A stretch of 64,000 nt of DNA. It comes from Squalus acanthias. Taxonomy: Eukaryota. The translations under genes and the position numbers were made by a program. Shown here in pieces: positions 5,934-48,303 of this stretch (position 1 is the first letter of the stretch; each line of letters starts with the position of its first letter). The notes under the pieces were generated by a model that worked only from the letters and a program-made list of their open reading frames with translations, was not told the origin of the DNA and searched no databases. The stretch spans positions 62,620,001 to 62,684,000 of the forward strand of contig CM059430.1 in NCBI GenBank assembly GCA_030390025.1, read 5' to 3'.

Positions 5934-5994
5934 ATGTTGTCGAGTGTGATGTTTCTTTTCCTATTCCTGTCTCTCCTGGGGATCATTTACACAG
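5934..5994 (+). CDS. Gene A exon 1, signal peptide
   Basis: ATG at 5934, 20 mostly hydrophobic codons, ACAG|GTACCT donor; homologous exons in genes B and C. Confidence 0.8.
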
Positions 5995-8900
5995 GTACCT
6001 GTTATTCTCATTCGAGCAGTCTTGATAAAAAAACTTACCAGAAGTAGTTACCACACAAATTGAATGAAATATGGTTAGTCGATCTTTATTCTTGTTACTC
6101 ATTTTCATTTCCATGTAGTAATGTGTTCTAAAATATTTGGTTCCGCATAGAGTACCATTAACCAAACTTTGAATATATTTTCTAACAGCTGCTGCACGTA
6201 CTTCGATCAGCGTGTCTCAAACTCCCAGACAAGTAACTAAATTAAGGGGGGCAGACATCACCTTCCAGTGCTTAGTCCCCCGGTCTCTTGAAAATTCAGG
6301 GGTAGAAGTGCGCTGGTGGAAACAGGGTGAGAATGAATATCTGCAAAGAGGAGCCGATAACAGAAAACTATTTACTCTGAAAGATAATGGAATCGGTTTT
6401 TTTGAGTTACTGAACGTGACTTTCCGGGACTCTGGAATGTATCACTGCGCAGTGATCCGTCAGGGAGGAATTATTGGAAATGGAACAGGATCGCATCTAA
6501 CTGTGACCGGTAAGTGACTGGAGAGAGCGGGACCGTCCAAATGTATCAAATGTAACAAGGATGATGTTTTGTCATTGTTTTACTGCACCGTCTTCGATAT
6601 TATAAAACAATTATATTAATACATTTGCAGTGACCCTCTGCTGAGAATTGCTAATTAAATGGCATAATATGACGTTCCATTTGCTGAGTTCTGTAACATT
6701 CCATCAATATTAACCAGATTAAGTAGCACGTTACTCGATCCTTCTCAAAATGCATTTATTACATCAGACTTCTGAAGAAGGAAGTTACGGATCAAATTCC
6801 AAATTTATTGATGACTGAATTATTTTTTTTCTCTTAATGCGCCGCTCCCGCCATAAACACGGCTCTCTCAGGGAGCGACCGAGGATAACATTCTTCTCTC
6901 ATGTTTAATATCCCCCAGTAACCTGATTTTCTCCATTCTCTGTTCCGCAGCTGCCCCAACTCCATTGAAGATTGTCTCCAGCACACCCGAGACCAATTCA
7001 GCTGCGTCTCTGATTCTTGTATGTGAAACGGCTGAGTTTTACCCGGGCGATTTAACCCTCGTTTGGTATAAAAATGGCATTGAAACCGCAATTGGGATAA
7101 ATTTCACTAAACGGCAGAACACTGAGGGACTGTATGAAGTTTCCAGCTCTTTTGAAGAGACGCATCCTTTGCCGAACGGGGCTGTTTACATCTGTTTGGT
7201 ATCTCATGCCTCCCTCCGGACGCCCGCCATTCTCATCCACACAGGTACGAAGCCAATATGCCAAGGAGTGAGGTCAGCCTCTGTTATATTCTGAAAGGTT
7301 ATTTCATAGAGTTTGTTCATATTTAGAATCATTAAGTTAGTTTGGAAAGCGCCCAGAAAACAGCAAAGCAAAGAGAAAATTAGTGTTTCAATGTAAAATC
7401 TTATTGACACGGAGCCATAGTAAAACCGAATGATTATTATCGTTCTCCACCCCTGTTAAACTTCATCAGCTTCCAACTGTTAAACACATATGAGCAGGCG
7501 ATGTATCTCTTCTATCCAATTATTTTCATTTCTTGCTGATTACTCAAAATTCATTTGTTTCCCTTTATCTGGTTCCTTACATGAGTTGCAGAACCAGGAG
7601 CGGCAGTTCGTTTGTCTGATTTCGAGCGTCTCCTAGTGGGTCTCCTGAGCCCGACCTCTGATGGGCGATTCACTGTGAGGGTTTTTACACTGTAAATTAA
7701 TCGCAAACACAAACCCATTTCCTGTGTTCGCAGCTCTTATTTTTCAGCAATGGCCTTCTACCCCAAAGTGCTGGATAAGCCGAGCAACCTAGAACATACA
7801 CTAAAATTCCATCATGTTTCCAAATCCCAAGACTCCAACACAGGACAACATGATTAATCCTAGGTCGTACCTTCTTCTATTATGTTCAAGGTTACCTTAA
7901 CCTCCAACTTGACTGATCGAAATCTGTTTTATTGTTTCGTCCTGGCCACAGCTCTGTCTACACCCCTTCCAGCCACACAGTCTCCCCATCCCACTTACTC
8001 TCTTTGCATCACCTCTCCAAAAGCCTCTTTCACCTAGTACATGTTGCCTTCCATCTTCCCACATCACTAAGACAGTAAACAAAGATTAGAGATAGATGTT
8101 GAGTATATTAAAATTGGAAATTGTGTGGGAGCCAATACACAACATTTGGAACTACCTAAGGAGAGAAATAACAGAGATTCCATTCATTAGGAGTGAAACA
8201 GACAAAATGCAAAAGGATGCAGCATAGACCTTTAGATAGACGTTTACAGACACCACAATGAATACAATGTGTGACAAACATAACAATAGAAAAAATTAAG
8301 AAAGAAGAATGTGTAAGGCAAAGATAGAGAGGGCAGCACAAAAGTAATTCGCAAGTGGGAAAGAAGCAAAGATACAATTGCAAGAAGAGCAACACCACAG
8401 GAGACTGATGATATTATAACCCCCGGAGTCACCTTCTTGTTACAGAATAGCCTATGCTCAAACGTACTGTGCACACCATCATTGGAAATCCATATATAAG
8501 CTTATTTCCCATGGCTTTGCGCATGGCGAGTAAGAGGTTGTACTGCTGCATAGGAAGGAGTGTGGCTTTCTGAGGGATGTAAGTAGGAGCCGTGGACACC
8601 TGAATCGAAAGAATTTGGAAATCTTTTCATAAGGAACTGAAATTAAGGAAACCTTTTTGAATGGTTGCTGGAGTACACGGACAATTCATGGGAATATAAT
8701 AAAAAACACATAAAATCGATGTTTGAATGATTAGAGCAACCCAATGTGTTGTACAACCGGGTATCTCGTCTGCCTTACAAACATTCTCAGTATAACATTA
8801 GTAAGCCTTCATGTTCCTGTATTTGATACATAACACGTATAAACATGAGGCTTATCTTTGTTTCCCGATTATATTTCATATTTTGCTGATTGTTACTCTT

Positions 8901-10292
8901 TGTTTTGTTTCCATGTTAAAATGTTTATTCATTACCGTTATCTGGTTTTACTTCATCTGGACGATTACCTGAACCTACGGTCAAGTTGTCTGCTCTCGTG
9001 TTTCTCCCAATGCAGTTCCCCATCATGATCCGCTTTTTGGCGAGTTTGAATGAAGAGTTCTGAAATTAACCCTTTGACCAACTTCTAATCCTGGCAGAGC
9101 GGTCTGAAGTGGGCTCTGTCTCATACATTTAATTTAAACTGTGCTTACTGTCTGACTGCTGTGCAGCCAGTTACATAATTTAATTACGCACTGATAAACT
9201 CGGCAGACAATAATTAATAAACCATCTCCTTCACTATTCAGTGACAATCTTACTTCAATAAAGTACAGATATGTGAACTGGGGGTTTTAACCGATTTCTG
9301 CAAGTCGGCATTTTGTAGAGGGAACGGCGAAACAATTGTTGCCGAATTGCCTGGGATTACATTAGACAGTAAGTAAAGAACATAAGAAAAGTGACGAATA
9401 AGAACAAACCATTTGGTCGAGGGAAACATTCAGCTCGTATATTACCTCACCTACACCAATCCCTCTTCGCAGTTTATGCCATAATTGTCTCATTCATTTG
9501 ATGCGGAAGTCCCTCCCATTATTATATCTAAAACGAATAACAGTTTTTAATTAAAACATCCTTATTGCCGTTCAATACTACGGAGTTACTAAAACATCAA
9601 TAGTTCAAACAATGAACTCTGCTGAGGCCTCTTTTTAGGAAACACCCGTCACAATGTACAACTTAATATATTTACTCCTATTATTCTTGCAGTTAGTGTC
9701 GGTATGACCCCTTACGACTCGGGTTTTAGATATGCGGTGGATGGATTGGCGTTCCTGCTGCTCCTGATCATCATTGGGACGCACTGCCTATTGCAGATTA
9801 ATAAAGGTGAGGTCTATAGTAAGCATTTGATTTTCATACAATAATTCAGCGAGCAACGGGGGACGGGGGAGTGAGTGTTTCCGAGTAGCGCAGAGGAAGG
9901 AGAACTAAATTATGACTTAAAGTTGAAGGCAGTGCTATCTGATTTCAGGGAGCGCTGATTATTCCGAACAGCAACGGATTCAGCTCTTTAAAACTCAGAA
10001 ATACTCCCAGAATTTAAATTAAAAGTGTCTGATTATCTAGATATTTGCTACAGAAATTTCCACTTCGCAGCATGATGAATGGAACGTATGTTGAATAGGT
10101 GTGAGACTCCGGCCCGGACTGGTTGTACACCATTCCTGGTCTCTGCAGTGGGATTTCAAACACTGATAGCACAAAGTGAAATTGAAAATCATGTTCGGCA
10201 TTATACCGACTCTGGAAACTTCTTTGAAAACATTTATTACATTTCATTACTTCACAGGGAAAAATTGCTGCAAAGTGACCGAACTGGCGTGA
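5934..10292 (+). CDS. Gene A: non-rearranging VJ-C1-TM Ig-superfamily receptor with a short tail, ~274 aa. Exons 5934-5994, 6189-6509, 6951-7244, 9693-9806, 10258-10292
   Basis: Leader MLSSVMFLFLFLSLLGIIYT; V domain C...WW...DSGMYHC plus J-like GNGTGSHLTV; C1 domain LVC...FYP...WYKNG...YICLVSHASL; TM exon FRYAVDGLAFLLLLIIIG; tail GKNCCKVTELA*. All junctions are phase 1 with GT-AG, total 825 nt, open frame. The C1 donor and last exon are less certain. Confidence 0.8.
6189..6509 (+). CDS. Gene A exon 2, germline-joined VJ Ig domain
   Basis: ttttctaacag acceptor and G|GTAAGT donor; B-strand Cys, WW, DSGxYxC and GxGSxLxV G-strand all in one exon. Confidence 0.93.
6951..7244 (+). CDS. Gene A exon 3, C1-set Ig domain
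   Basis: ctctgttccgcag acceptor; C-x4-FYP, WYKNG, YEVSSS, YxCxVxHxSL; phase-1 donor ACAG|GTACGA (3' end ambiguous). Confidence 0.88.
9693..9806 (+). CDS. Gene A exon 4, TM exon with Arg and Asp
   Basis: ttattcttgcag acceptor, AAG|GTGAGG donor; VSVGMTPYDSGFRYAVDGLAFLLLLIIIGTHCLLQINK; 114 nt as in genes B and C. Confidence 0.85.
10258..10292 (+). CDS. Gene A exon 5, short cytoplasmic tail ending in an early stop
   Basis: atttcattacttcacag acceptor; GKNCCKVTELA-TGA; downstream donor CTG|GTACAT at 10299/10300; homologous to the gene B exon at 23356-23396. Confidence 0.6.
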
Positions 10293-10957
10293 GGAGCTGG
10301 TACATTTATTCATTCATCTCGCAAAAGGTTCAAATGTGAAGAAAGATTAATATCCTAATTACGTCAGAACTGTTTGTCCATTTACTAAAAGTATTTGTCC
10401 CGCTTAATGGGCCATTCAAATCGTATTCAGCGGAATATTTGTCGCCGGCGGGAAAGGATTTCACCCTCGAGGCGAAATTGCTGTTCGGAAAAAAATGCGA
10501 GCGCGGTGTAAAACCGGTTGCCGAATCGCTATCGCCTGTTTCGTGCTACCGACGAAGACCAATTTCAGCTGCGTCCCCGATGCGTTGCTGGTTTAAGTGA
10601 TTTTCTAGCAGACAAAAAAACGGTCAGCTTCGTCGAAAATGTACCTAAGTAATAACTGTTTATAGATTCAATATTGTTTGTAATTGGGCAACTCCGTGTT
10701 CTGGAACTACCGCTCGTTTAAACATTTCCGTGACACTGCAGTGTAAAACGAATATTGACAGGTTTAATTATGAGTTATAACGAACGCAGTACTCACCGGT
10801 CAAACATTCGCACTTGTTTCACTGCATTAATTATGCTTCCTGCCCTTTGTATCTAACCCATGTTGTTCTGTTCAATGTTTAAGCAGTAGTATGTAAGCTG
10901 GTGAAGGCAATGAACTAGCCACATTAGAAAATATATAATTATTTCTGGCCCATGCGG

Positions 10958-11360
10958 GAAGAAAAGGCTTAGATTGTTGATATGCTGCAGTAGGTTTGAG
11001 CAGAACTAAGTTAACTACAAGATGTAAACTTGAAGAGGAGAGTAATGTGTCCCATCAGCCGGGGCTGGGTAGCGGATCAGAAAGACACAGATCACCAGTG
11101 CAGCACCAACATTCATGCGATAACTGAGACTACAAGTTTGGGTGACTCGGATCGTGTAGTGTACCTCAAGCTGTCTGTGTGTTATTCTGATGATTGTTTT
11201 CGGCAGCAGTCCACAAAATTGGCAAAACGACCAATTTACAATATTTCCAAACACGGGCTTACCGACAAAACAAGGGACCTACGCGACTCTAGATTTGTCA
11301 GGCTCGAAAAAGCATGGACTCCAAAAATAAAAAAAACAGGGTAACATATTCCGGTGTTAT
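10958..11360 (+). pseudogene. Decayed ITIM-tail exons downstream of gene A (relics at 10958-11058 and from 11265)
   Basis: Aligns to gene B tail exons. Acceptor cag>cgg, in-frame TAG, 1-nt deletion, donor gt>cc; second acceptor cag>ccg; residual YAAV and TYATLDL. Confidence 0.7.
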
Positions 11361-13499
11361 ATTATTGAATGTGGGTGTAATAGTTTATTATTGTCTTACT
11401 TATTTGAGGAATTTTCATTTAATTACTTGTAAGAAAATCAAATTGCCTTTCATATTTTTGATCAATCTGTAGCATTTCACAGATGACAAATCCTTGTTTT
11501 GCTGTATCTAAATATCATCATACATAAATTCAATAAAAATATATTTTATATGACCTCTGTTATCAATCAACCAATCCTGATTTATTGAACTTTTGCGGGT
11601 AAAACTGTGAAGCTGAGTTTTGAATTGTGTGTTGCGTTACCGTGTTCTGACCTCCTGTGCAGGCGATTCTCCTGGTTTGGAAGGCAGGGCGCTCTAGTTT
11701 ATGGACTCTTCCATAAACCCACTGAGCACAGCTTGCAGATGAAGGCGTATAAGATGCTTTTCTTTAAATTCTGTATGGCTAGATCACTTGAATTACCGGG
11801 TTAGAACATTGTGTGGCAGCCGATCAATTCCAGTGACCAAGGATTTAGCTCCGAATGTAAAGATAATACAAGACGAAGTGAATCCGTTGCTTCTTGTTCT
11901 GCCGAACTCTTCTGGCTTGATGACTGTGTGCATTAACAAGCGTTTTACAGCAGAGAAACAACGTCTGTACTTTTCTCTCTCTCCACATGAACCACTCAGT
12001 TAGTTCCATTTACCATTTAGATTCACACAATCGTTAATATCCCTCTTTTTCTAGCAACTAATTAAATTCTAACAGAACTCTTGGGCTGTGATTCCACAAC
12101 GTTTTGTGGCAGAGAACGTCCACATCTCATGTTCTAACCAACCTCTGAGCAAAGAGTATTTTACCTCTCCCTTTATTTTTCCCGATTATGTTAAAGTTGT
12201 GTTCACTCGCCACCGTCTACTGGACAGTGAAAATAAACTATCACTGTTTCCTTGTCATAACGCCTTGTACTTTTGAAAACCTCTATCAAGTCACTCAACA
12301 AACTTTTGTGCTCCAGTTAAAGAAGTCCACTTTTCTCAATTAATAACTCTCCATTCTTGGTCAGTTCGGCGGCGCATTTTAATTTATTTTTTATTCTTCC
12401 ATAGTTCTACATAATCTCCTACACCAGTTGAACATAATCTCCTTGCTTCTGTAATCGATACCACCAAAATCTAAACCAAGACACACCCTTTATATTTTTA
12501 CTTTGTAATAAACTGCTGTTTCAACCAGTCATTGATGTCCATCTGCTCCTCTGCAGCTTTTAAAATCCTACAATTCAAGATGCATTTCCTGTTCCTAAGT
12601 GTACCTGCAAAAATATACCATTTCACATTTCCCTGCATTCTACATCAAACATTTATCTGCCCTACAAATTAACGATCGATGTCGTCTGCTGCATTTCACG
12701 ATCTGCGTCATAATTTCTTTCCCGATTCCCCATGAAGTGCCATCTGCACGTTTTAATGATGCACCCACAGTTCCCCAGTCAAGATAATTGATGTGTATAA
12801 TTTATAGAAGTAGCCGAACGCAGCGTCCTTGGAACATCACTCGCTACGTCTTAGCACGAGAAAAGTCCTTTTACACTTAAACTTTGTTTCCTCTCTTCCA
12901 ACTATCTCTCTAACCATGTGGCCACCTTGCCCTTACTTCCACGTGGCGTTATAGTATGTGGGACGGTATCCAATGCGTTTTGAAAATTTATATAAACTTC
13001 ATCTATTGCCTTTCCTTTGACTCTTTCGTATTTCTTCAGTGAAGCCTATAAGTCAAGCGCAATCTTCCCTTTTGAAATTCGGGCTGACTGGGATTGATTA
13101 GCTCAGGTTTCTGCAAGAGATTAGCAGTTTTATCCGGAATGACACAGAGCTTGCGAGATGTAAGTAAATGTGCAAATGTTTCCTTGCCGTTTTGTTGCCA
13201 TCTGTGTCACATTCTAATTGCTCATCTAATAAAAATGCATTGGCTTCGAGCTGGAGATTTAGTCAACGTGGAGTAGATTATTTTGATAATTATGTAAACT
13301 AAAGTAACACATTCACGTACAGCAGTCAAAACATGAACATTTGGGCGTTCTATCAGTCCCGGGTTCTGATAAGATGTAAGGTATCAACGAAGGCATTGAC
13401 CAGTCTGCTTTCAGCTGCACGAGACGTTGTGCTAAATATTGACAAGAGTGTATCGATTTCTCTAGCTAAGTAAACAACACGACTGAGTAGCTCAGCTCT

Positions 13500-13855
13500 C
13501 CATGGCAAGTATATCCATCCTTAGGTAAGGAGAGCAAAGCTATACACAATACTCCAGGTGTGGTCTCACCAGGGTCCTATATAATTGCAGTAAGACGTCT
13601 TTACTCTTATACTCAAATCCTCTTGTAATAAAGGCCAACATACCATTTGCTTTTCTAAATGCTGGCTGTACCTGCATGTTAACTTTCAGTAATTTGTGTA
13701 CACGGACACCCAGGTCCCTCTGAACACCAACATTTCCAAATCTCTCACCATTTAAAACATACTCTGCTTTTCTATTTTTGCTACCAACGTGGATAACTTC
13801 ACATTTCTCCAAGTTATATTTCATTTGCCATGTTCTTGCCCACTTCTTAGCCTGG
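13500..13855 (-). mobile_element. CR1 fragment truncated at the inversion breakpoint
   Basis: KYNLEKCEVIH...LVRPHLEYCV; the right-arm counterpart extends further (39790-40760). Confidence 0.85.
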
Positions 13856-15713: not shown

Positions 15714-15887
15714 CTAATTGATTTTTCCTTCTGTGTACAAAGGCTCTGTAACTCCTCTTTGTTTTTTTGTCTGCAACTGGGCATACTCTGTGCTTCTTTC
15801 GTTATGTTTGCATTTCCCCGTTTTCTCTGAGTTAGTCAATGCTAGAGTCGTGTATGTCAGCTTGCCACGGCCTGTCCCATTTTCGGT
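15714..15887 (-). CDS. Terminal cytoplasmic exon, distal copy, with ITIM LTYTTL and ITSM-like TEYAQL
   Basis: Phase-0 acceptor ggctttacag; TENGTGRGKLTYTTLALTNSEKTGKCKHNERSTEYAQLQTKKQRGVTEPLYTEGKIN*. Confidence 0.8.
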   Translation of the reverse strand, partial: TENGTGRGKLTYTTLALTNSEKTGKCKHNERSTEYAQLQTKKQRGVTEPLYTEGKIN

Positions 15888-16094
15888 CTGTAAAGCCAAT
15901 GTTTGGGAATATTGTTAATTGGCCTTTTTGCAAGTTCAGTGGACTGCTGCTCAAAGCAGATATCAGAAGTACGCACAAATAGCCTCAATACATCACACGG
16001 TTAAATTCAGCACAAACATATTCCTTCTGCTATCGCATTAATGTTGATCTTACACTGGTGATCTATGTTTCTCTGATCTGTCACTTAGCCCTAC

Positions 16095-16196
16095 CTGATC
16101 GTACACGGTTCCCTGCTCTTCATGTTTACGTCTTGGAGTTTTCTTGGCTTTGCTCATTTCGAATGCAACATAATGCAGGATCTCAGCCGCTGCTCC
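16095..16196 (-). CDS. Cytoplasmic exon, distal copy (LHYVAF, TVYDQ)
   Basis: 102 nt, open, cag acceptor and GTAGGG donor; paralogous to 19299-19400. Confidence 0.72.
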
Positions 16197-16361
16197 CTGC
16201 ATGGGTCACAAAGAAAATGTTTGGTTATGTCGTCAGTTCATTGTTTTCACCAGTTTACGTACCGCTGATCAAACATTCAACAGATTGACCGGGGCTGGAG
16301 TTCAAGTGCACAAACGATAGTTCATATATATATAGGTAAGTGGGAATATTAAGGCACTGTG

Positions 16362-18920: not shown

Positions 18921-19093
18921 CTAATTGATTCTTACTTCTGTGTAGACAGCCTCTGTTACTTTTCTTTGTTATTTTGTCTGCAGCTGGCCATACTCTGCGC
19001 TTCTTTCATTATTTTTGCATTTCCCCGTTTTCTCTGAGCCAGTCAATGCTAGAGTCGCGTATGTCAGCTTGTCACGGGCTGTCCCTTTTCGGT
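18921..19093 (-). pseudogene. Terminal cytoplasmic exon, proximal copy (frameshifted): LTYATL, AEYGQL, AVYTEV
   Basis: ggctttacag acceptor; 1-nt deletion and AAA>TAA relative to the 15.8-kb copy; AATAAA directly after the TAG (18914-18919). Confidence 0.75.
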
Positions 19094-19298
19094 CTGTAAA
19101 GCCAATGTTTGAGAATATTGTTACTTGGCCTTTTTGCAAATTAGTGGACTGCTGCTCAAAGCAGACATCAGAAGGACGCATAAATAGCCTCAATACAACA
19201 CACGGTTAACTTCAGCACAAACATATTCCTTCTGCTATCGTATGAATGTTGATATACACCAATGATCTATGTTTCTCTGATCTGTTACTCATTCTTAC

Positions 19299-19400
19299 CT
19301 GAGCGTACGCGGTTCTCACCTCTTCACGTTTAGGTCTTGGAGTTTTCCTGGCTCTGCTCAAATCTAATGCAGCATAATGCACGGTCTCAGCCGCTGCTCC
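19299..19400 (-). CDS. Cytoplasmic exon with ITIM VHYAAL, proximal copy
   Basis: ttcctttctgtcccatgcag acceptor, CAG|GTAAGA donor, 102 nt, phase 0-0: GAAAETVHYAALDLSRARKTPRPKREEVRTAYAQ. Confidence 0.8.
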
Positions 19401-22330: not shown

Positions 22331-24064
22331 ACGTTCTCCCGCCCTCTGTTCGGACTGGACTACGCTCTTCCACCACACTTCCTTCACACCTGCTCAACGT
22401 TCGCCCTCTCCTTCCCCACCAACACCACCCAGACCGCAGCAGTTCAAGAAGGCAGCTCAATACCACCCTCTCAAAGGCAAATAAGGATGGGCAAAAAATA
22501 AATTAATGTTAAATATGAGAGCCTATTCTGTGTTGGTCCTATAACCTGAATAATATTACATTTATGTTTTATTTCCCGGACTTGACTATTCCAATGTTCT
22601 CCTGGCCAGCTCCCATCTTCCACCGTCAGTGAACTTGAGCTCATCCAAAACTCTGCTGCACTTATCCTAACATGCAGCAAGTCTCATTCACCCACTACCC
22701 CTGTGGTCGTTGACCTAAATTAGCTCATGGTCCACCAATAATGTTCCCGCTAAGCTACACGGTCAGCAGCTGCCAGGAGGTCCCATGCAGGCTGCTTACC
22801 GGTGTTTGAATGGGAGATTTGGTGCAAGCAAGAAATTTTGAATGGGCTGTGCAGCCCGTTAAAGGGATCGTGCACCCCTCAAAAATTAGGGGGAACATTG
22901 TAAACCAACAGAATGATTTTAAAATTCTCATCTCCATGTTAAAATCCCTCCATGGCCTCACACCTTCCTTTCTGAACTCTGCATTGTGAGCGCTGTGAGT
23001 GCTCCTAACCCGAGAGGGTGAGCCCTGTCTGTTTTCTGAAAGTACTAGTGTTCGCACTGTGAGTTCTGGAGCCTGGCTGTCACAATGAATGGATCATATT
23101 ACTCATTGCAAAGATCTTGATTACTCTCCAGCAGGCATGGTCAAATTACACATTCCAGACAAACTGTTGAGTGTGTCTTGTCCTCCAAGGGGACCGATCA
23201 GAAATCTGATCTTGTCCTCGAAGGGGACCAATCAGAAATTTCGTGTTGCAACCAGACACGACCGTAGACTTAAGCTATTCTGACGTGATTATGATATAAT
23301 CTTTCCATTATAGCAACCTTGACATTTCAACCATCTACCAGGATGAATGAATGAACTCTTCACGGCGGTTCGGTCTCGTTACACATTCTTCTTTACCTGA
23401 AAACGAATGAAATTGAATGATATTGAAAGATTGAAATATTTACTCAGTTTCCGTGTCAATGATTGAAAAGACATTTCTCGAGTCAGAACAATGCATAAAC
23501 TAATTTCCAATTCCGCATTGTGCCGATAGTGTTTGAAATCCAAGCCCTTGTAGCGATCAGCAATGGTGCATTTTTTGGATTTTTTTTCGAAAACTGAGGG
23601 AATCGTTTTGGACACTAAGGGAATCAAGGGATATGGGAATAGGGTGGGAAAGTGGTGTTGAGGCTCGAGGGGTCGTATAGCCTACTCCTGGTCCTATTTC
23701 TTATGTTCAGATGTGTACAACCATTCCCCGGCCAGAGCCTCACACTCTTTCACTCAAACTAGTTGTGCATCCACAACAGAATGTGTGGGAAAGTGATTGT
23801 GTGTCAGGGTACATGTCATTTATTATGCTGCAAAGGGGGCATTTTTGTTGCAAACATCCAGATAATTATCTCCATTTTTATTACGATTCTCTGAGAATGT
23901 CTGCGTTTTAAAAATGCATTTGGTACAATCGGCGCTCTCTGAAAACAGCTCACACGGTTTTCAACTTTAATTCCGAATCGAGTTCTCATTTCCCCGTGTT
24001 ACCCGGAGACTGTCACTACCCGTGGGGTTTTAAACTAAAATGAAGTGCTTACATTAGATCTTAC

Positions 24065-24178
24065 CGTCATTATTCTGCAGTCGGCACCGCGTCCCAATGA
24101 AGATCATTAGCACTAGAAACGCCAATCCACCCACCGCACACGCAGAAGCCCAGAAGTAAAGTGAATTATCGACAATAC
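24065..24178 (-). CDS. Gene B TM exon, uncharged
   Basis: GIVDNSLYFWASACAVGGLAFLVLMIFIGTRCRLQNND; 114 nt; AG/GTAAGA boundaries. Confidence 0.85.
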
Positions 24179-25353: not shown

Positions 25354-25665
25354 CTTGGTTAAGTTTAGAAACAGTAAGGGTGACAAGAGCTGAAGTCTCG
25401 AGAGAGACATGAGAAACCAAACAGTTATAACGGGCGTCGCTCGGGACAGGCTGTGTCTCAACCAAAGAGCTGGAAACTTCAAACAGTCCCTCCGTGTTCT
25501 GCACTTTCCTGGTATGTATTCCTAATGCAGTTTCGATGCCATTTTTATACCAAGTGAGGGTGAAATTCTCCGGACAAAACGCAGCCGTTTCACACACAAA
25601 AGACAGAGAAGCAGGCGAATTCCCTTCAGGTGTCCTGGAGACAATCTTCAGTGGGGTTGGGGCCG
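25354..25665 (-). CDS. Gene B C1 exon (open)
   Basis: APTPLKIVS...FVCETAAFCPENFTLTWYKNG...YNCLVSHVSL...NQ; ttccgcag acceptor, CAAG|GTATGA donor. Confidence 0.88.
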
Positions 25666-27355: not shown

Positions 27356-27654
27356 CAATTACTATTAGATGTGATCCGGTTCCATTTCCTCGAACTATTC
27401 CCCGATGGAACACTGCACAGTGATAGACTCCAGAATCTCGGAAAGTCGCGCTCAGCAACTGAAAGAACCCTCTCGCTTTCTGTTATCGGCGCTTGTGCGC
27501 AGGTATTCATTTTCACCCTGTTTTCACCAATACACTCTTACCTTGGAATTGTCCGGCGAGATGGGGAATAAGCAGTATAAGGTGATGTTCCCCCCTCTGG
27601 ATACAGTCGCTTGTTTTGGCACTTGAGTCACTCGGAACGTGTTGTTGTCCGCTG
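27356..27654 (-). pseudogene. Gene B VJ exon (disrupted)
   Basis: VTQVPKQATVSRGGNITLYCLFP...VYW*KQGENEYL...[frameshift]GFFQLLSATFRDSGVYHCAVFHRGIVRGNGTGSHLIV. Confidence 0.88.
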
Positions 27655-28149
27655 CTGTCAGAAAATATAGTCAAGTACAGGTTAATTGTATTAGAGATGA
27701 CCTGGGGATAGAAGACAGAAAAAACCTAGATAGAGATATTGCGGTTCACTAAATGAATGCGGAAACTACTTCGGATATGTAAATTAAAGTAGCTGGGACA
27801 ATGAATAAAGAATTGCCTGTGTAAAAAATCTGGCGGAGATTCAGGCAAAGGAAAAGCAAAGCCGCCGACATTCGGAGCAACTGATGACTCTCTGCATTAA
27901 CTGCGAGTTTGCAACTGTTAAAAAAGGTTTGCGGTTTATTTTCAATTAGATATGCCGCAATGACATTTGACATCATGTAACTGAGGGTTCAGAAATTTGC
28001 CTTCGTTTGTGAAGTGGGATTTTCTAACTTCTGCACTTAATTCGACTGCTCGAATCACATGTGTCACAGACAGCAATGAGTAAGGTAACATTTTTGATTT
28101 TCAAATGCAAAACTTACTAACACACGCGGAGTCAGTGTTGTTTCTTGAC

Positions 28150-33801: not shown

Positions 33802-33816
33802 ATTGCGTTACACTTT

Positions 33817-34170: not shown

Positions 34171-34183
34171 GCATACAGTGGTG

Positions 34184-40760: not shown

Positions 40761-42889
40761 AGAGCTGAGCTACTCAGTCGTGTTGTTTACTTAGCTAGAG
40801 AAATCGATACACTCTTGTCAATATTTAGCACAACGTCTCGTGCAGCTAAAAGCAGACTGATCAATGCCTCCGTTGATACCTTACATCTTATCAGAACCCG
40901 GGACTGATAGAACGCCCAAATGTTCATGTTTTGACTGCTGTACGTGAATGTGTTACTTTAGTTTACATAATTATCAAAATTATCTACTCCACGTTGACTA
41001 AATCTCCAGCTCGAAGCCAATGCATTTTTATAAAATGAGCAATTAGAATGTGACATAGATTGCAACATAACGGCATGGAAACATTTGCACATTTACTTAC
41101 ATCTCGCAAGCCCTGTGTCATTCCGGATAAAACTGTTAATCTCTTGCAGAAACCTGAGCTAATCAATCCCAGTCAGCCCGAATTTCAAAAGGGAAGATCG
41201 CGCTTGACTTATAGGCTTCACTGAAGAAATGCCAAAGAGTAAACGGAAAGGCAATAGATGAAGTTTATATAAATTTTCAAAACGCATTTGATACCGTCCC
41301 ACATACTATAACGCCACGTGGAAGTAAGGGCAAGGTGGCCACATGGTTAGAGAGATAGTTGGAAGAGAGGAAATATAGTTTAAGGGTAAAAGGACGTTTC
41401 TCGTGCAAAGACGTAGCGAGTGATGTTCCACCGACGCTGCGTTCGGCTACTTCTATATATTATACACATCAATTATCTTGACTGGGGAACTGTGGGTGCA
41501 TCATTAAAACGTGCAGATGACACTTCATGAGGAATCAGGAAAGAAATTATGACGCAGATCGTGAAATGCAGCAGACAACATCGATCGTTAATTTGAAGGG
41601 CAGATACATGCTTGATGTAGAATGCAGGGAAATGTGAAATAGTATATTTTTGCAGGTACATTTAGGAACAGGAAATGCATCTTGAATGGTAGCAGAGGAG
41701 CAGATGGACCTCAATGACTGATTGAAACAGAAGTTTATTACGAAGTAAAAATACAAAGGGAGTGTCTTGGTTTGGATTTTGGTGGCATCGATTACAGAAG
41801 CAAGGAGTTAATGTTCAACTGGTGTAAGAGCGTATGTAGAACTGTGGAAGAATAAAAAATAAATTAAAATGCGCCGCCGAACTGACCAAGAATGGAGAGT
41901 TATTAATTGAGAAACGTGGACTTCTTTAACTGGAGCTCAAAAGTTTGTTGAGTGACTTGATAGAGGTTTTCAAAAGTACAAGGCGTTATGACAAGAAAAC
42001 AGTGATAGTTTATTTTCACTGTCCAGTAGACGGTGGCGAGTGAGCACAACTTTAACATAATCGGGAAAAATAAAGGGAGAGGTAAAATACTCTTTGCTCA
42101 GAGGTTGGTTAGAACATGAGATGTGGACGTTCTCTGCCACAAAACGTTGTGGAATCACAGCCCAACAGTTCTGTTAGAATTGAATTAGTTGCTAGAAAAA
42201 GAGGGATATTAACGATTGTGTGAATCTAAATGGTAAATGGAACTAACTGAGTGGTTCATGTGGAGAGAGAAAAAAGTACAGACGTTGTTTCTCTGCTGTA
42301 AAACGCTTGTTAATGCACACAGTCATCAAGCCAGAAGAGTTAGGCAGTACAAGAAGCAACGGACTCACTTCGTCTTGTATTATCTTTACATTCGGAGCTA
42401 AACCCTTGGTCACCGCAATTGATCGGCTGCCACACAATGTTCTAACCCGGCAATTCAAGTGATTTAGCCATACAAAATTTATAGAAAAACATCTTATACG
42501 CCTTCAACTGCAAGCTGTGCTCAGTGGGTTTATGGAAGAGTCCATAAACTAGAGCGCCCTGCCTTCCAAACCAGGAGAATCGCCTGCACAGGGGGTCAGA
42601 ACACGGTAACGCAACACACAAGTCAAAACTCAGGCTTCACAGTTTTACCCGCAAAATTTCAATCAATCAGGAATGGTTGATTGATAACAGAGGTCATATA
42701 AAATGCATTTTTATTGTATTTATGTATGATGATATTTAGATACAGCGAAACATGGATTTGTCATCTGTGAAATGCTACAGATTGATCAAAAATATGAAAG
42801 GCAATTTGATTTTCTTACAAGTAATTGAATGAAAATTCCTCAAATATTTAATACAATAACAAACTATTACACCCACATTAAATGATATA

Positions 42890-43282
42890 ACACTAGAATA
42901 TGTTACCCTGTTTTTTTTATTTTTGGAGTCCCCTGCTTTTTCGAGCCTGAGTCGCGTAGGTCCCCTGTTTTATCTGTAAACCCGTGTTCGGAAATATTGT
43001 AAATTGGTCGTTTTGCCAATTTTGTGGACTGCTGCCGAAAACAATCATCAGAATAACACACAGACAGCTTGAGGTACACTACACGACCCGAGTCACCCAA
43101 CCCCTTGTAGTCTCAGTTATCGCATGAATGTTGGTGCTGCACTGGTGATCTGTGTCTTTCTGATCCGCTACCCAGCCCCGGCTGATGGAACACAGTCCTC
43201 TCCTCTTCAAGTTTACATCTTGTAGTTAACTTAGTTCTGCTCAAACCTACTGCAGCATATCAACAATCTAAGCCTTTTCTTC
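42890..43282 (-). pseudogene. Decayed ITIM-tail exons downstream of gene C
   Basis: Inverted counterpart of 10958-11360 with the same lesions in the first relic, plus a ~10-nt deletion in the TYATL exon. Confidence 0.65.
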
Positions 43283-43924
43283 CCGCATGGGCCAGAAATA
43301 ATTATATATTTTCTAATGTGTTACATACTACTGGTTAAACATTGAACAGAACAACATGGGTTAGATACAAAGGGCAGGAAGCATAATTAATGCAGTGATA
43401 CAAGTGCGAATGTTTGACCGGTGAGTAATGTGGTCCTTATAACTAATAATTAAACCTGTCAATATTCGTTTTACACTGCAGTGTTACGGAAATGTTTAAA
43501 CGAGCGGTAGTTCCAGAACACGGAGTTGCCCAATTACAAACAATATTGAATCTATAAACAGTTATTACTTAGGTACATTTTCGACGAAGCTGACCGTTTT
43601 TTTGTCTGCTAGAAAATCACTTAAACCAGCAACGCATCGGGGACGCAGCTGAAATTGGTCTTCGTCGGGAGCACGAAACAGGCGATAGCGATTCGGAAAC
43701 CGGTTTTACACCGCGCTCGCATTTTTTTCCGAAAAGCAATTTCGCCCCGAGGGTGAAATCCTTTCCCGCCGGCGACAAATATTTCGCTGAATACGATTTG
43801 AATGACCCATTAAGCGGGACAAATACTTTTAGTAAATGGACAAACAGTTCTGACGTAATTGGGATATTAATCTTTCTTCATATTTGAACCTTTTGCGAGA
43901 TGAATGAATAAATCTACCAGCTCC

Positions 43925-46900
43925 TCACGCCAGTTCGGTCCCTTTGCAGCAATGTTTCCCTGTGAAGTAATGAAATGTAATAAATGTTTTCAAAGATTTT
44001 TCTTGAGTCGGTATAATGCCGAACATGATTTTCAATTTCACTTTGTGCTATCAGTGTTTGAAATCCCACTGCAGCGACCAGGAATGGTGTACAACCAGAC
44101 CGGGCTGGAGTCTCACACCTATTCAACATACGTTCCATTCATCATGCTGCGAAGTGGAAATTTCTGTCGCAAATATCTAGATAATCAGACACTTTTAATT
44201 TAAATTCTGGGAGTATTTCTGAGTTTTAAAGAGCTGAATCCGTTGCTGTTTGGAACAATCAGCGCTCCCTGAAACCAGATAGCACTGCCTTCAATTTTAA
44301 GTCATAATTTAGTTCTCCTTCCTCTGCGCTACTCGGAAACATTCACTCCCCCGTCCCCCGCAGCTCGCTGAAGTATTGTATGAAAATCAAATGCTTACTA
44401 TAGATCTTACCTTTATTAATCTGCAATAGGCAGTGCGTCCCAATGATGATCAGGAGCAGCAGGAACGCTAATCCATCCACCGCATATCTAAAACCCGAGT
44501 AGTAAGGGGTCATACCGACGCTAACTGCAAGAATAATAGGAGCAAATATATTAAGTTGTACATTGTGACGGGTGTTTCCTAAAAAGAGGCCTCAGCAGAG
44601 TTCATTGGTTGAACTATTGATGTTTTAGTAACTCCGTAGTATAGAAAGGCAATAAGGATGTTTTAATTAAAAACTGTTATTCGTTTTAGATATAATATTG
44701 AGAGGGACTTCTGCATCAAATGAATGAGACAATTATAGCATAAACTGCGAAGAGGGATTGGTGTAGGTGAGGTAATATACGAGCTGAATGTTTCCATCGA
44801 CCGAATGGTTTGTTCTTATCCGTCACTTTTCTTATGTTCTTTACTTACTGTCTGATGTAATCCCAGGCAATTCGGTAACAAATGTTTCGCCGTTCCCTCT
44901 ACAAAATGCCGAATTGCAAAAATCGGTTAAAACCCCCAGTTCACATATCTGTACTTTATTGAATTAAGAATGTCACTGAATAGTGAAGGAGATGGTTTAT
45001 TAATTATTGTCTGCCGAGTTTATCAGTGCGTAATAAAATGATATAACTGGCTGCACAGCAGTCAGACAGTAAGCACAGTTTAAATTAAATGTATGAGACA
45101 GATCCCACTTCAGACCGCAGTGACAGGATTAGAAGTTGGTCAAACGGTTAATTTCAGAACTCTTCATTCAAAATCGCCAAAAAGCGGATCATGATGGGGA
45201 ACTGCATTGGGAGAAACCCGAGAGCAGACAACTTGACCGTACGTCCAGGTAATCGTCCAGATGAAGTAAAACTAGATAACGGTAATGAATAAACATTTTA
45301 ACATGGAAACAAAACAAAGAGTAACAATCAGCAAAATATGAAATATAATCGGATAACAAAGATAAGCCTCATGTTTATATGTGTTATGTATCAAATACAG
45401 GAACTTGGAGGCTCACTAATGTTATACTGAGAATGTTTGTAAGGCAGACGATATACCCGGTTTTACAACACATTGGGTTCCTCTAATCATTCAAACATGG
45501 ATTGTATGTGTTTGTTTATATTCCCATGAGTTGTCCGTGTACTCCAGCAACCATACAAAAAGGTTTCCTTAATTTCAGTTCTTTATGAAAAGATTTCCAA
45601 ATTCTTTCGATTCAGGTGTCCACGGCACCGACTTACATCCCTCAGAAAGCCCCACTCCTTCCTATGCAGCAGTACAACCTCTTACTCGCCATGCGCAAAG
45701 CCATGGGAAATAAGCTTATATATGGATTTCCAATGGTGGTGTGCACAGTACGTTTGAGCATAGGCTATTCTATAACAAGAAGGTGACTCCGGGGTTTATA
45801 ATATCATCGGTCTCCTGTTGTTGCTCTTCTTGCAATTGTATCTTTGCTTCTTTCCCACTTGAGAATTACTTTTGTGCTGCCCTCTCTATCTTTGCCTTAC
45901 ACCTTCTTCTTTCTTATTTTTTCTATTTGTATGTTTGTCACATACTTTATTCATTGTGGTGTCTGTAAAGGTCTATCTAAAGGTCTGTGCAGCACCCTTT
46001 TGGATTTTGGTCTGTTTCACTCCTAATGAATGGAATCTCTGTTATTTCTCTCCTTAGGTAGTTCCAAATGTTGTGCATTGGCTCCCACACAAGTTCCATT
46101 TTTAATATACTCAACATCTATCTCTAATCTTTGTTTACTGTATTAGTGATGTGGGAAGATGGAAGGCAACATGTACTAGGTGAAAGAGGCTTTTGGAGAG
46201 GTGATGCAAGATGGAGAGTTGAGAGAGTAAGTGGGATGGGGAGACTGTGTGGCTGGAAGGGGTGTAGACAGAGCTGTGGCCAGGACGAAACAATAAAATA
46301 GATTTCAATCAGGCAAGTTGGAGGGTAAGGTAGCCTTGAACAGTATAGAATAAGGTACGACCTAGGATCAATCATGTTGTCCTGTGTGGGAGTCTTGGGA
46401 TTTGGAAACATGATGGAATTTTAGTGTGTGTTCTAGGTTGCTCGGCTTATCCAGCACTTTGGGGTAGAAGGCCATTGCTGAAAAATAAGAGCTGGGAATA
46501 CAGGAAATGGGTTTGTGTTTGCGAGTAAATTACAGTGTAAAAACCCTTACAGTCAATCGCCCATCGGAGGTCGGACTCAGGAGCCCCACTAGGAGTCCCT
46601 CGAAACCAGACAAACGAACTGCCGCTCCTGGTCCTGCAACTCATGTAAGGAACCAGATAAAGGGAAACAAATGAGTTTTGAGCAGTCAGCAAGAAATGAT
46701 AATAATTGGATAGAAGAGGTACATCGCCTGCTCATATTTGTTTAACAGTTGGAAGCTGATGAAGTTTAACAGGCAGTTACTGGGTGGAGGACGATAATAA
46801 TCATTCGGTATTACTATGGCTCCGTGTCAATAAGATTTTACATTGAAACACTAATTTTCTCTTTGCTTTGCTGTTTTCTGGGCGCTTTCCAAACTAACTT

Positions 46901-48303
46901 TATGATTCTCAGTTTGAACAAACTCTATGAAATAACCTTCCAGAATATAACATTGGCTGACCTCACTCCTTGGCATGTTGGCTTCGTACCTGTGTGGATG
47001 AGAATGGCGGGAGTCCGGAGGGAGGCATGAGATACCAAACAGATGTAAACAGCCCCGCTCGGCAAAGGCTGCGTCTCTTCAAAAGAGCTGGAAACTTCAT
47101 ACAGTCCCTCAGTGTTCTGCCGTTTAGTGAAATTTATCCCAATTGCGGTTTGAATGCCATTTTTATACCAAACGAGGGTTAAATCGCCCGGGTAAAACTC
47201 AGCCGTTTCACATACAAGAATCAGAGTCGCAGCTGAATTGGTCTCGGATGTGCTGGAGACAATCTTCAATGGAGTTGGGGCAGCTGCGGAAAAGAGAATG
47301 GAGAAAATCAGGTAACTGGAGGATATTAAACATGGGAGAAGAATGTTATCCTCGGTCGCTCCCTCAGAGAGCCGTGTTTATGGCGGGAGCGGCGCAATAA
47401 GAGAAAAAAAATCATTCAGTCATCAATAAATTTCGAATTTGATCCGTAACTTCCATCTTCAGAAGTCTGATGTAAGAAATACATTTTGAGAAGGATCGAT
47501 TAACATGCTACTTAATCTGCTTAATAGTGATGGAATGTTACAGAACTCAGCAAATGGAACGTCATATTATGCCATTTAATTAGCAATTCCGGGCAGAGTG
47601 TCACTGTAAATGTATTAATATAATTGTTTTATAATATCGAAGACGGTGCAATAAAACAATGAGAAAACATCATCCTTGTTACATTTAATACAATTGGACG
47701 TTCCCGCTCTCTCCGGTCACTTACCGGTCACAGTTAGATGTGATCCTGTTCCATTTCCAATAATTCCTCCCTGACGGATCACTGCGCAGTGATACATTCC
47801 AGAGTCCCGGAAAGTCAGGTTCAGTAACTCAAAAAAACCGATTCCATTATCTTTCAGAGTAAATCGTTTTCTGTTATCGGCTCCTCTTTGCAGATATTCA
47901 TTCTCACCCTGTTTCCACCAGCGCACGTCTAACCCTGAATTTTCAAGGGACCGGGGGACTAAGCACTGGAAGGTGATGTCTGTCCCCCTTAATTTAGTTA
48001 CTTGTCTGGGAGTTTGAGACACACTGATCGAAGTACGCGCAGCAGCTGTTAGAAAATATATTCAAAGTTCGGTTAATTGTATTCTATGCGGAACCAGATA
48101 CTTTAGAACACATTACTACATGGAAATGAAAATGAGAAAGAAGAATAAAGATCGACTAACTATATTTCATTCAATTTGTGTGGTAACTACTTCTGGTATG
48201 TTTTTTTTTATCAAGACTGCTCGAATGAGAATAAACAGGTGCCTGTGTAAATGATCCCCGGGAGAGACAGGAATAGGAAAAGAAACATCACACTCGACAA
48301 CAT
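43925..48303 (-). CDS. Gene C: paralogue of gene A. Exons 48243-48303, 47725-48045, 46990-47283, 44411-44524, 43925-43959
   Basis: Exon lengths identical to gene A (61/321/294/114/35) and frame open. V exon differs at 9 of 321 nt by my count (5 amino-acid changes). Intron 1 donor is GC; leader has L>P. Confidence 0.78.
44411..44524 (-). CDS. Gene C TM exon
   Basis: VSVGMTPYYSGFRYAVDGLAFLLLLIIIGTHCLLQINK; ttgcag acceptor, GTAAGA donor. Confidence 0.85.
46990..47283 (-). CDS. Gene C C1 exon
   Basis: ORF track 46925..47269 with C1 motifs and the same splice sites as gene A. Confidence 0.88.
47725..48045 (-). CDS. Gene C VJ exon
   Basis: ORF track 47717..48022 with AG/GT boundaries matching gene A. 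Confidence 0.92.

What the first reader, a model, noticed from the sequence alone, without database searches (positions are those of the whole stretch)
5934..48303. Cluster of non-rearranging, antigen-receptor-like VJ-C1-TM receptor genes
Seen: three genes share leader / V with fused J motif (YHC-x9-NGTGSHLxV) / C1 / TM exons, all phase 1, with no RSS between the V and J parts. Known: V plus C1 in one chain is the TCR and Ig light-chain layout. Germline-joined VJ domains occur in NKp30, CD28/CTLA4, CD8 and SIRPs, and VJ-C1 genes have been proposed as pre-RAG receptor relics. Inference: this is an expanding shark family of such receptors that I cannot assign to a named gene.
Basis: partly seen in the sequence, partly recalled or inferred. 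Interest (0 to 1): 0.85.

Follow-up and report, generated by a model that had tools for sequence, protein, structure and literature searches.

The report
Shark SIRP-like V-C1 receptor cluster
Three copies of a shark immune-receptor gene, each with one antibody-like variable domain and one constant domain and needing no DNA rearrangement, belong to a large, unstudied cartilaginous-fish family whose signalling tail matches mammalian SIRP-alpha; here one copy is broken and two have lost that tail.

Summary
The J-like motif occurs three times. Each copy has leader, V(J), C1 and TM exons in phase 1, and no RSS splits V from J.

- A (+) and C (-) are a 95.5% identical inverted duplication.
- B's V exon carries a TGA, a 22-nt deletion and a lost donor.

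The family is real and found across cartilaginous fish. 24 of 30 looked-up hits are sharks, rays or chimaera, with inconsistent automatic names: SHPS-1-like, NCR3LG1-like, Ig lambda-like, tapasin-related-like.

- The V-C1 unit scores the same against Ig light chains as against SIRP-alpha d1-d2, 72-74 bits.
- The four-tyrosine tail is SIRP-alpha-like: 40.7 bits, against a maximum of 9.7 in 2000 shuffles.
- B keeps such tail exons. A and C end early at a stop in a small exon, retain decayed tail exons, and have Arg/Asp in the TM.

My reading is a SIRP-type paired inhibitory/activating receptor cluster. I could not test synteny or PRARP. RNA contigs show the splices only in a 95%-alike paralogue. 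First readers of this scan noted the same family elsewhere on this piece.

The parts
5934..5994 (+). Gene A leader exon (ATG; GT donor; phase 1)
   Evidence: An RNA contig of a 95%-alike paralogue joins 5994 to the start of the V exon.
6189..6509 (+). Gene A V exon with fused J-like strand (GNGTGSHLTV), 321 nt
   Evidence: Pfam V-set 2e-10. AlphaFold model pLDDT 91.7. Nearest folds are VNAR, Ig V and TCR V.
6951..7244 (+). Gene A C1-set exon, 294 nt
   Evidence: Pfam C1-set 1.9e-10. Model pLDDT 87.5. All listed rows to rank 50 of the fold search are MHC class II beta2 domains.
9639..9806 (+). Gene A stalk/TM exon; Arg and Asp four residues apart in the outer TM; an alternative in-frame acceptor lies at 9683
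   Evidence: The longer form starts N-T like the catshark homologue P0004.
10258..10299 (+). Gene A inferred small cytoplasmic exon. Entered in phase 1 it reads K-N-C-C-K-V-T-E-L-A-stop (TGA 10290-10292). No RNA support.
   Evidence: It is the homologue of the exon encoding G-K-Q-G-R...E-E-L in P0161/P0170.
10981..11330 (+). Gene A decayed tail exons (fossil ITIM modules)
   Evidence: Alignment to B's tail exons shows a 1-nt deletion plus stops and an 18-nt deletion. Tail HMM gives only 8.6 and 14.3 bits.
15714..16196 (-). Distal tail cassette: T1d 16196-16095 and T2d 15887-15714 (four tyrosines, stop). It is collinear with the Heptranchias homologue.
   Evidence: Tail HMM 31.1 and 61.1 bits.
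18969..19400 (-). Proximal tail cassette: T1p 19400-19299; T2p from 19093 (canonical acceptor, runs into a stop after 9 codons) or from 19151 (alternative acceptor, open) to 18969
   Evidence: Tail HMM 44.1 and 51.9 bits. It is an 86% tandem copy of the distal cassette.
23353..23396 (-). Gene B small cytoplasmic exon homologue; no GT donor
24065..24178 (-). Gene B TM exon, uncharged TM
25354..25665 (-). Gene B C1 exon, open, 312 nt
   Evidence: It sits in a starred clade with P0161, P0170, P0004 and P0008.
27356..27654 (-). Gene B V pseudo-exon: TGA, 22-nt deletion, donor lost
27817..27871 (-). Gene B leader exon (GC donor)
42900..43259 (-). Gene C decayed tail exons, with a further 10-nt deletion that removes the Y-A-T-L-D-L core
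43918..43959 (-). Gene C inferred small cytoplasmic exon, with a stop at the same place as in A
44411..44578 (-). Gene C stalk/TM exon
46990..47283 (-). Gene C C1 exon (6 of 294 nt differ from A)
47725..48045 (-). Gene C V exon (9 of 318 in-frame nt differ from A)
48243..48303 (-). Gene C leader exon (GC donor)
3537..13854 (.). Left arm of the inverted duplication; right arm is 50699-40405. Outer pieces 1-1631 and 53913-52286 match at 93%.
   Evidence: Self-BLAST, 95.5% over 10,349 columns
61407..63998 (-). 3' flank of a further copy whose body lies beyond the window end
   Evidence: 81-87% match to A 11427-13854

Best explanation
The window holds part of a multigene cluster of non-rearranging IgSF receptors found across cartilaginous fish. 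Each gene has a split leader, one V domain with a built-in J strand, one C1-set domain, a stalk/TM exon and cytoplasmic exons. The family works like the SIRP family, as paired receptors that share similar ectodomains. Inhibitory members have an uncharged TM and a tail of two tandem modules (ITIM-type tyrosine, about 22 residues, then a T-E/V-Y-A-Q type tyrosine). This tail is collinear with SIRP-alpha's four tyrosines. Once phosphorylated it would recruit SHP-1/SHP-2 (inferred). Other members have a short tail and an Arg or Lys in the outer TM, and would signal through an acidic-TM ITAM adaptor (inferred). In this window B is an inhibitory-type gene that is decaying. Its V exon is broken three ways and its small cytoplasmic exon has no donor, yet its C1, TM and two tandem tail cassettes are still open. 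A and C are a young inverted duplicate pair of the short-tailed type. Read in phase 1, their small cytoplasmic exon stops after 11 codons (the split first codon included), and it is 2 nt shorter upstream of a shared stretch than B's. The old ITIM exons downstream are degenerating. The TM carries Arg and Asp at i, i+4. I read A and C as products of an inhibitory-to-activating (or decoy) conversion. Shown here: exon anatomy, domain types, family range, tail homology, lesions. Inferred: phosphatase and adaptor recruitment, ligand, cell type, and use of the small exon.
For: Anatomy. Domain types: Pfam and structure models. Family range: 266 hits at E<=1e-3 and 80 at E<=1e-10. 24 of 30 looked-up hits are chondrichthyan and carry a single V(J); the other 6 are multi-Ig proteins of bony vertebrates. 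All 11 hits of a second search are chondrichthyan. SIRP link: hhalign of 45 family members against 9 bovid/cervid SIRP-alpha gives probability 99.56 and E 1.7e-23, collinear through V, C1, TM and all four tail tyrosines. A tail HMM from 13 family tails scores the yak SIRP-alpha tail at 40.7 bits, and 0 of 2000 shuffles reach it (maximum 9.7). A one-module ITIM tail of a teleost multi-Ig protein scores 14.0 bits. The language-model atlas puts SHPS-1-like and SIRP-alpha clusters first, 0.97 each. Pairing: 13 of 16 short-tailed members have K/R in the outer TM against 6 of 17 ITIM-tailed ones, Fisher p 0.013, by a crude classifier. The two types are interleaved in the C1 tree. Window: tail exons of B score 31-61 bits and those of A/C 8.6-14.8 bits; lesions. 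Splicing of leader-V and V-C1 is seen in contigs of three runs of the same species label.
Against: The ectodomain is not specifically SIRP-like. No SIRP chain is among the best 60 PDB sequence hits of the V exon or among the rows listed to rank 50 of the fold search. The family V-C1 unit scores 73.8 bits on a lambda chain, 72.6 on a kappa chain and 72.4 on SIRP-alpha d1-d2. SIRPs have two C1 domains, and these genes have one. A word-indexed search with a full-length member and one with a tail found no bony-vertebrate relative. ITIM plus xEYxxI modules also occur in Siglec-type tails, so part of the tail likeness could be convergent. The RNA contigs are 90-99% alike and match neither A nor C at the variant places. 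After the C1 exon they continue into an exon that is not in the window. So expression of A and C, and the small exon, are unproven. An Asp beside the TM Arg is unusual for a DAP12-type partner. The TM/tail classifier is rough and its rows are not phylogenetically independent.
Confidence: 0.62

Rival explanations
1. A separate VJ-C1 lineage, either PRARP-like or restricted to cartilaginous fish, that is not a SIRP relative. On this view its SIRP-alpha-like tail arose by convergence on SHP-binding motifs or by exon shuffling.
For: The V exon does not find SIRP d1. The V-C1 unit is equidistant from Ig light chains and SIRP-alpha. There is one C1 rather than two. Automatic names disagree. [quoted passage not shown]
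Against: The whole-length profile alignment is collinear with SIRP-alpha, including TM and four tyrosines with similar spacing. The tail score is far above shuffles and above a one-module ITIM tail. No PRARP sequence or paper was at hand, so this rival was not tested directly.
Confidence: 0.22
2. Germline-joined immunoglobulin light-chain or TCR-like genes, meaning former rearranging loci joined by RAG in the germ line, as is known for shark Ig clusters (recalled).
For: The V plus C1 layout and split leader fit. Some members are auto-named Ig lambda-1 light chain-like. The best single V-C1 score of the family profile is to a lambda chain.
Against: TM and cytoplasmic exons with ITIM modules are present. 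None of 58 family V domains has the Phe/Trp of the Ig/TCR J motif. The best E-values of V-exon matches to antigen-receptor V domains are 8.5e-5 (IgNAR V) and 8e-4 (TCR beta); Ig V-domain matches are 1.3e-3 or weaker. There are no RSS remnants. The family is old and diverse, and includes chimaera.
Confidence: 0.03
3. All three copies in this window are non-functional relics of the family; only paralogues elsewhere are active.
For: B has at least four lesions. The tail exons of A and C are decayed. C and B have GC leader donors. No laid contig is 99% or more alike; all come from paralogues. The A/C exon differences are 7 synonymous to 12 non-synonymous (pN/pS about 0.55; the sums and the ratio are my own arithmetic), which is only mild constraint.
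Against: In A and C all four main exons are open with consensus splice sites, and both keep the same stop in the small exon. Exon divergence (2-3%) is below that of the one intron measured, between the V and C1 exons (5.9%). Short-tailed, TM-Arg members are a regular class of the family in other species. Only 3 small runs of uncertain type were available.
Confidence: 0.15

Closest known systems
SIRP family (SIRP-alpha/beta/gamma; SHPS-1, CD172)
   Same: A single-exon V domain with a G-x-G J strand is followed by C1-set domain(s), one TM and a four-tyrosine tail that aligns tyrosine by tyrosine with bovid SIRP-alpha. The family also contains short-tailed members, many with a basic TM residue, as in SIRP-beta, or with no motif, as in SIRP-gamma (features from PMC12975943 passages). 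V-only isoforms exist in both.
   Different: It has one C1 domain rather than two. The V is not close to SIRP d1. The residue before G-x-G is Asn, usually within an N-x-S/T sequon (39 of 58). The family is much larger and more divergent. A/C carry Arg plus Asp in the TM. CD47 binding and synteny are unknown.
UrIg / UrIg2 (non-rearranging shark VJ-C1 genes; PMC12227049, sections 4 and 7 read)
   Same: Both are non-rearranging, have a split leader, a single-exon VJ and C1-type domains, and occur in cartilaginous fish. The UrIg2 chain 9dmx is among the top PDB hits of the C1 exon (3.3e-10) and of the family profile.
   Different: UrIg has three C domains and is secreted. UrIg2 has nine to eleven C domains. 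Neither is reported with an ITIM tail; the paper contains no 'SIRP' and no 'ITIM'. Only the rear part of the UrIg2 V aligns with the family profile.
PRARP (chicken non-rearranging IgSF genes; Fu et al. 2019, not held, known to me only from citations and recall)
   Same: [quoted passage not shown] That they have a V-C1-TM layout is my recollection.
   Different: I could not compare them. No sequence or text was available.
Ig light chains / TCR chains / IgNAR V
   Same: The V-C1 order is shared. The V model's nearest folds are IgNAR V domains (TM 0.68-0.78, 22-28% identity) followed by Ig and TCR V. The V-C1 profile score equals that for light chains.
   Different: There are no RSS and no separate J. 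The J lacks Phe/Trp. The genes have their own TM and signalling exons.
MHC class II beta chain (beta2 domain)
   Same: All rows listed to rank 50 for the C1 exon model are class II beta2 domains (TM 0.73-0.83, 26-32% identity). Class II beta chains are also high in the sequence search (about 1e-8).
   Different: Only the C1 domain matches. There is no peptide-binding domain.

Membership tests
SIRP family | N-terminal V-set domain with a J-like G-x-G strand, encoded with V in one exon | tested here: met
   Pfam V-set 2e-10. The motif occurs x3. G-x-G is present in 52 of 58 family V domains.
SIRP family | [quoted passage not shown] | tested here: not met
   There is one C1 exon per gene in the window. 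By motif count, all but one (P0037) of the V-C1 family proteins that I fetched show one C1. P0037 has two near-identical C1 copies.
SIRP family | SIRP-alpha-type cytoplasmic tail: four tyrosines in two ITIM-type modules | tested here: met
   This holds for the family and for B's tail exons. It does not hold for A and C, whose tail exons are decayed.
SIRP family | Activating partners with a short tail and a positively charged TM residue that binds DAP12 | tested here: inconclusive
   A/C have Arg (and Asp) in the outer TM and a predicted short tail. 13 of 16 short-tailed members have K/R there. Adaptor binding cannot be tested here.
SIRP family | V domain closer to SIRP d1 than to other V domains | tested here: not met
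   No SIRP chain is in the best 60 sequence hits or among the rows listed to rank 50 of the fold search. A yak SIRP-beta1-like protein is hit only at 2e-9.
SIRP family | Orthology by synteny with the SIRP locus | not tested
Apart from family exons, the window shows only retrotransposon-type ORFs (three with RVT_1 or endonuclease domains) and ORFs without a Pfam match; 7 of the 27 ORFs listed at 110 aa or more were scanned.
SIRP family | Binding of CD47 by the V domain | not testable with these tools
   -
Rearranging antigen receptors (Ig, TCR) | V and J as separate segments flanked by RSS | tested here: not met
   V and J form one open exon. No RSS-like site lies in or beside a V exon.
Rearranging antigen receptors (Ig, TCR) | J motif F/W-G-x-G | tested here: not met
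   0 of 58 have F or W before G-x-G; 43 of 58 have Asn.
UrIg / UrIg2 | VJ followed by three or more C1-type domains; secreted (UrIg) or long multi-C membrane form (UrIg2) (PMC12227049 sections 4, 7) | tested here: not met
   There is one C1 exon, then a TM exon.
PRARP | Sequence relationship to chicken PRARP genes | not testable with these tools
   The paper is not held. No PRARP sequence was returned by any search.
B7-H6 (NCR3LG1) / tapasin-related (automatic names of some members) | B7-type V-C ectodomain, or tapasin N-terminal domain plus Ig domains | tested here: inconclusive
   No B7-H6 or tapasin chain is among the best 60 of 9411 PDB matches of the family profile. I made no direct comparison.

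The most novel reading that the evidence does not exclude
This family, found across cartilaginous fish, is their counterpart of the SIRPs and keeps the simplest antigen-receptor-like layout: one VJ and one C1. Its V is nearest to IgNAR/Ig/TCR V, its C1 is nearest to MHC class II beta2, and its tail is SIRP-alpha's. If so, SHP-recruiting SIRP signalling was already joined to a pre-RAG-type VJ-C1 ectodomain at the base of jawed vertebrates. The family would then be a living model of the non-rearranging receptor from which antigen receptors and SIRPs diverged. Activating partners would arise again and again from inhibitory genes by tail-truncating frameshifts, as caught in A and C.
Probability: 0.3. 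Interest if true: 0.7.

Novelty: new variant of a known kind. Interest (0 to 1): 0.5.

Why it matters
SIRPs have been proposed as relatives of the antigen-receptor precursor because they combine a VJ-type V with C1-set domains (PMC2785349, abstract and discussion passages). [quoted passage not shown]

A large V-C1 family with a SIRP-alpha-type tail in sharks, rays and chimaera would place this receptor design at the root of jawed vertebrates. It would sit beside UrIg and UrIg2, the non-rearranging shark genes now discussed as RAG-target relatives (PMC12227049).

It would also give comparative immunologists a natural series of inhibitory and activating pairs in which to study how such pairs arise.

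For this window alone the gain is smaller. It shows one decaying inhibitory gene and a duplicated short-tailed pair with fossil ITIM exons.

Tried and rejected
Germline-joined Ig/TCR: rejected. The genes have TM and ITIM exons, the J lacks F/W, and there is no RSS.

UrIg/UrIg2 membership: rejected on the number of C domains (PMC12227049).

B7-H6 and tapasin-related, as some automatic names say: no support in the PDB profile search.

Searches that led nowhere:
- Tail-only word-indexed search found only three Heptranchias proteins.
- Full-length word-indexed search found only 11 chondrichthyan proteins.
- Findings search by words returned nothing.
- Paper searches for a shark or chondrichthyan SIRP or ITIM family listed no relevant paper.
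- The PRARP paper and the UrIg 2023 paper are not held.

Positive selection between A and C: the counts are too small to say anything (V 4 synonymous / 5 non-synonymous; C1 1/5; TM 2/2).

RNA support for A or C themselves: not obtained. The three runs listed are small, their type is a guess, and the contigs come from paralogues.

Synteny: not obtainable. MHC notes of this scan shown to me lie on other pieces of the genome (8 of 65 shown); this is a lead only.

They may list genes of this family.

Full report
**What is in the window**

A six-frame scan finds the motif Y-H-C, nine residues, then N-G-T-G-S-H-L-x-V exactly three times: A on + at 6440-6505, B on - at 27425-27360, and C on - at 47794-47729.

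Around each lie a leader exon, a V exon that runs straight through the J-like strand, a C1 exon and a stalk/TM exon. All are in phase 1 with AG acceptors. I translated each exon on its own and built, searched or folded no joined model of any of the three genes.

- Pfam calls the A exons V-set (2e-10) and C1-set (1.9e-10), and C gives the same families.
- A loose RSS scan gave four matches in 64 kb. None is in or next to a V exon, and three of them are the same repeated flank.

**How the three copies relate**

- A and C are the arms of an inverted duplication: 3537-13854 against 50699-40405, 95.5% over 10,349 columns. Outer pieces 1-1631 and 53913-52286 match at 93%.
- Their exons differ less than the intron measured between them: V 9 of 318 nt, C1 6 of 294, V-C1 intron 5.9%.
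- B is an older paralogue, 65-73% alike at the DNA level.
- B's V exon is dead. TGG has become TGA at the conserved W-W, 22 nt are deleted before the F strand, and the donor GT is gone. A LINE fragment sits in its V-C1 intron and a 503-aa reverse-transcriptase ORF in its long cytoplasmic intron.
- The 3' flank of a further copy lies at 61407-63998.

**Tails**

Downstream of B's TM exon, on the same strand, are two tandem cassettes of two exons each (86% alike): 19400-19299 plus 19151/19093-18969, and 16196-16095 plus 15887-15714. Each encodes two modules of an ITIM-type tyrosine followed about 22 residues later by a second tyrosine.

The distal cassette is collinear with the tail of the Heptranchias homologue P0161. 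With the canonical acceptor, the proximal cassette runs into a stop after 9 codons. It stays open only from an upstream acceptor.

Between the TM and tail exons, homologues encode about 15 residues on a small exon.
- B's copy (23396-23353) has no GT donor.
- In A (10258-10299) and C (43959-43918) the copy is 2 nt shorter upstream of a shared stretch. Entered in phase 1, it stops after 11 codons, the split first codon included, at the same place in both.
- The A and C homologues of the ITIM exons have frameshifts, stops, an 18-nt deletion and, in C, a further 10-nt deletion. They score 8.6-14.8 bits against a family tail HMM, whereas B's exons score 31-61.
- A and C carry Arg and Asp four residues apart in the outer TM. 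B's TM is uncharged.

The small exon and the short tail are inferred. No RNA covers them.

**Expression**

One run search listed three small runs of the same species label. Their type is only guessed to be RNA, and they hold next to none of the stretch's words.

Laid at 90% or more, 8 contig records fell on the leader, V, C1 and last-exon regions. Two carry joints that fit the leader-V and V-C1 exon junctions.
- None is 99% or more alike.
- At ten variant places in the C1 exon they match A at none. They match C at one, and at a second place only one of the two variant letters read is C's.
- After the C1 exon they continue into letters absent from the window (0 matches with up to 3 mismatches).

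So the splicing pattern is real in a close paralogue. Expression of A and C is not shown.

**The family**

The A V exon, searched against 1.84 billion representatives, gave 266 proteins at E<=1e-3, 80 at E<=1e-10 and 3 at E<=1e-30. The best is 71% identical.

I looked up names for 30 of the 150 listed.
- 24 are from sharks, rays or the chimaera Callorhinchus and have one V(J), nearly all followed by one C1.
- The other 6 (turtle, paddlefish, viper, gecko, rainbowfish, yak) are multi-Ig proteins.
- A second search with a Callorhinchus member gave 11 proteins, all chondrichthyan.
- Their automatic names disagree: tyrosine-protein phosphatase non-receptor type substrate 1-like, SIRP beta-1-like, NCR3 ligand 1-like, Ig lambda-1 light chain-like, tapasin-related-like, class II beta-like, or uncharacterized.

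No curated identity exists in these records. In the held library I found no paper on such a family. The PRARP paper, the first UrIg paper and supplements were not available.

**What it resembles**

Ectodomain:
- The V model (pLDDT 91.7) is nearest to shark IgNAR V domains, then Ig and TCR V. No SIRP is among the rows listed to rank 50.
- The C1 model (pLDDT 87.5) has MHC class II beta2 domains in every row listed to rank 50.
- A profile of 45 members scores a V-C1 unit at 73.8 bits on a lambda chain, 72.6 on a kappa chain, 72.4 on SIRP-alpha d1-d2 and 59.5 on UrIg2.

The ectodomain is therefore antigen-receptor-like in the broad sense and not specifically SIRP-like.

The J strand keeps G-x-G in 52 of 58 members but never has the Phe/Trp of Ig/TCR J. 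43 of 58 have Asn there, and in 39 of 58 the Asn lies within an N-x-S/T sequon.

Tail:
- The family profile aligns along the whole length of bovid/cervid SIRP-alpha (probability 99.56, E 1.7e-23), with TM and all four tyrosines in order.
- A tail-only HMM scores the yak SIRP-alpha tail at 40.7 bits, against at most 9.7 in 2000 shuffles.
- It scores 35-43 bits on 14 mammalian proteins fetched with the SIRP search (13 with full-length SIRP-alpha-type tails), and 14.0 bits on the one other ITIM-tailed non-family protein at hand.
- The language-model atlas also puts SHPS-1-like and SIRP-alpha clusters first.

**Paired design**

44 family proteins had a predicted TM after I dropped 9 isoform or duplicate rows. 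Of these, 17 have two or more tail tyrosine motifs, 16 have short motif-less tails and 11 are in between.

K/R in the outer TM occurs in 13 of 16 short-tailed proteins against 6 of 17 ITIM-tailed ones (Fisher p 0.013). The classifier is crude and the rows are related.

In a C1 tree of 56 rows the two types are interleaved, often as sister pairs. A and C are sisters (100/99). B sits in a starred five-row clade with inhibitory and short-tailed members of other sharks.

This is the pattern of SIRP-alpha/beta/gamma and other paired receptors (features from PMC12975943 passages).

**Verdict**

The family can nevertheless be placed as a SIRP-type paired receptor family of cartilaginous fish with a single C1. 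Whether it is orthologous to SIRPs, to PRARPs, or to neither needs synteny and a proper tree, and I could do neither.

First readers of this scan noted the same family at eight other places shown on this piece, from 0.74 Mb before to 12.8 Mb beyond the window. They also noted a similar inhibitory-to-activating reading nearby. I took that reading as a lead and tested it here on A and C only.

Noticed in passing
window 20004-21515 (+): An intact 503-aa reverse-transcriptase ORF (Pfam RVT_1 5.9e-31) of a LINE lies on the opposite strand inside gene B's long intron, between the TM and tail exons. Further RT and endonuclease fragments are at 37579-38034 (-) and 54939-55496 (+).
   Followed up: partly
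window 26277-26907 (-): LINE 3'-end ORF fragments are inserted in the V-C1 intron of gene B. Similar copies occur at 1076-1512, 36192-36628, 52405-52841 and 60195-60630.
   Followed up: no
window 27817/27816 and 48243/48242: The leader-exon donors of B and C are GC, whereas A has GT. Because the older paralogue B shares it, GC may be the ancestral, working donor in this family rather than a defect.
   Followed up: no
proteins P0161 and P0169 (Heptranchias perlo), compared with window 27356-27654: The public gene models of the B-like gene of another shark either skip exactly the stretch of the V exon that holds B's stop and deletion, or read the V exon in a wrong frame. The same V-exon damage may therefore be shared between species. 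That would make it old, with the rest of the gene kept open.
   Followed up: partly
window 6476-6484 and family alignment A5: The residue before the J-strand G-x-G is Asn, within an N-x-S/T glycosylation sequon in 39 of 58 family members. In Ig and TCR this position holds the Phe/Trp of the V-V interface. A glycan there would argue for a monomeric V, like IgNAR V, which is also the nearest fold.
   Followed up: partly
window 15456-16361 and 18665-19565: The two-exon tail cassette is tandemly duplicated (86% identity). Each copy has its own stop codon, so they would be alternative 3' ends rather than one longer tail. Family members with three modules exist in other species (P0013, P0061).
   Followed up: partly
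window 11889-11928, 42318-42357, 63201-63240: A weak RSS-like match (heptamer with one mismatch, 24-bp spacer, poor nonamer) recurs in the shared 3' flank of A, C and the partial fourth copy. It is probably chance carried along by the duplication.
   Followed up: no
proteins P0002, P0006, P0012, P0017 (turtle, paddlefish and others): Bony-vertebrate proteins with four to six tandem V(J)-type domains and a TM are among the best hits of the shark V exon (summed E to 6e-36, about 29% identity). Their automatic names (NCAM2, hemicentin-like) look wrong.
   Followed up: no
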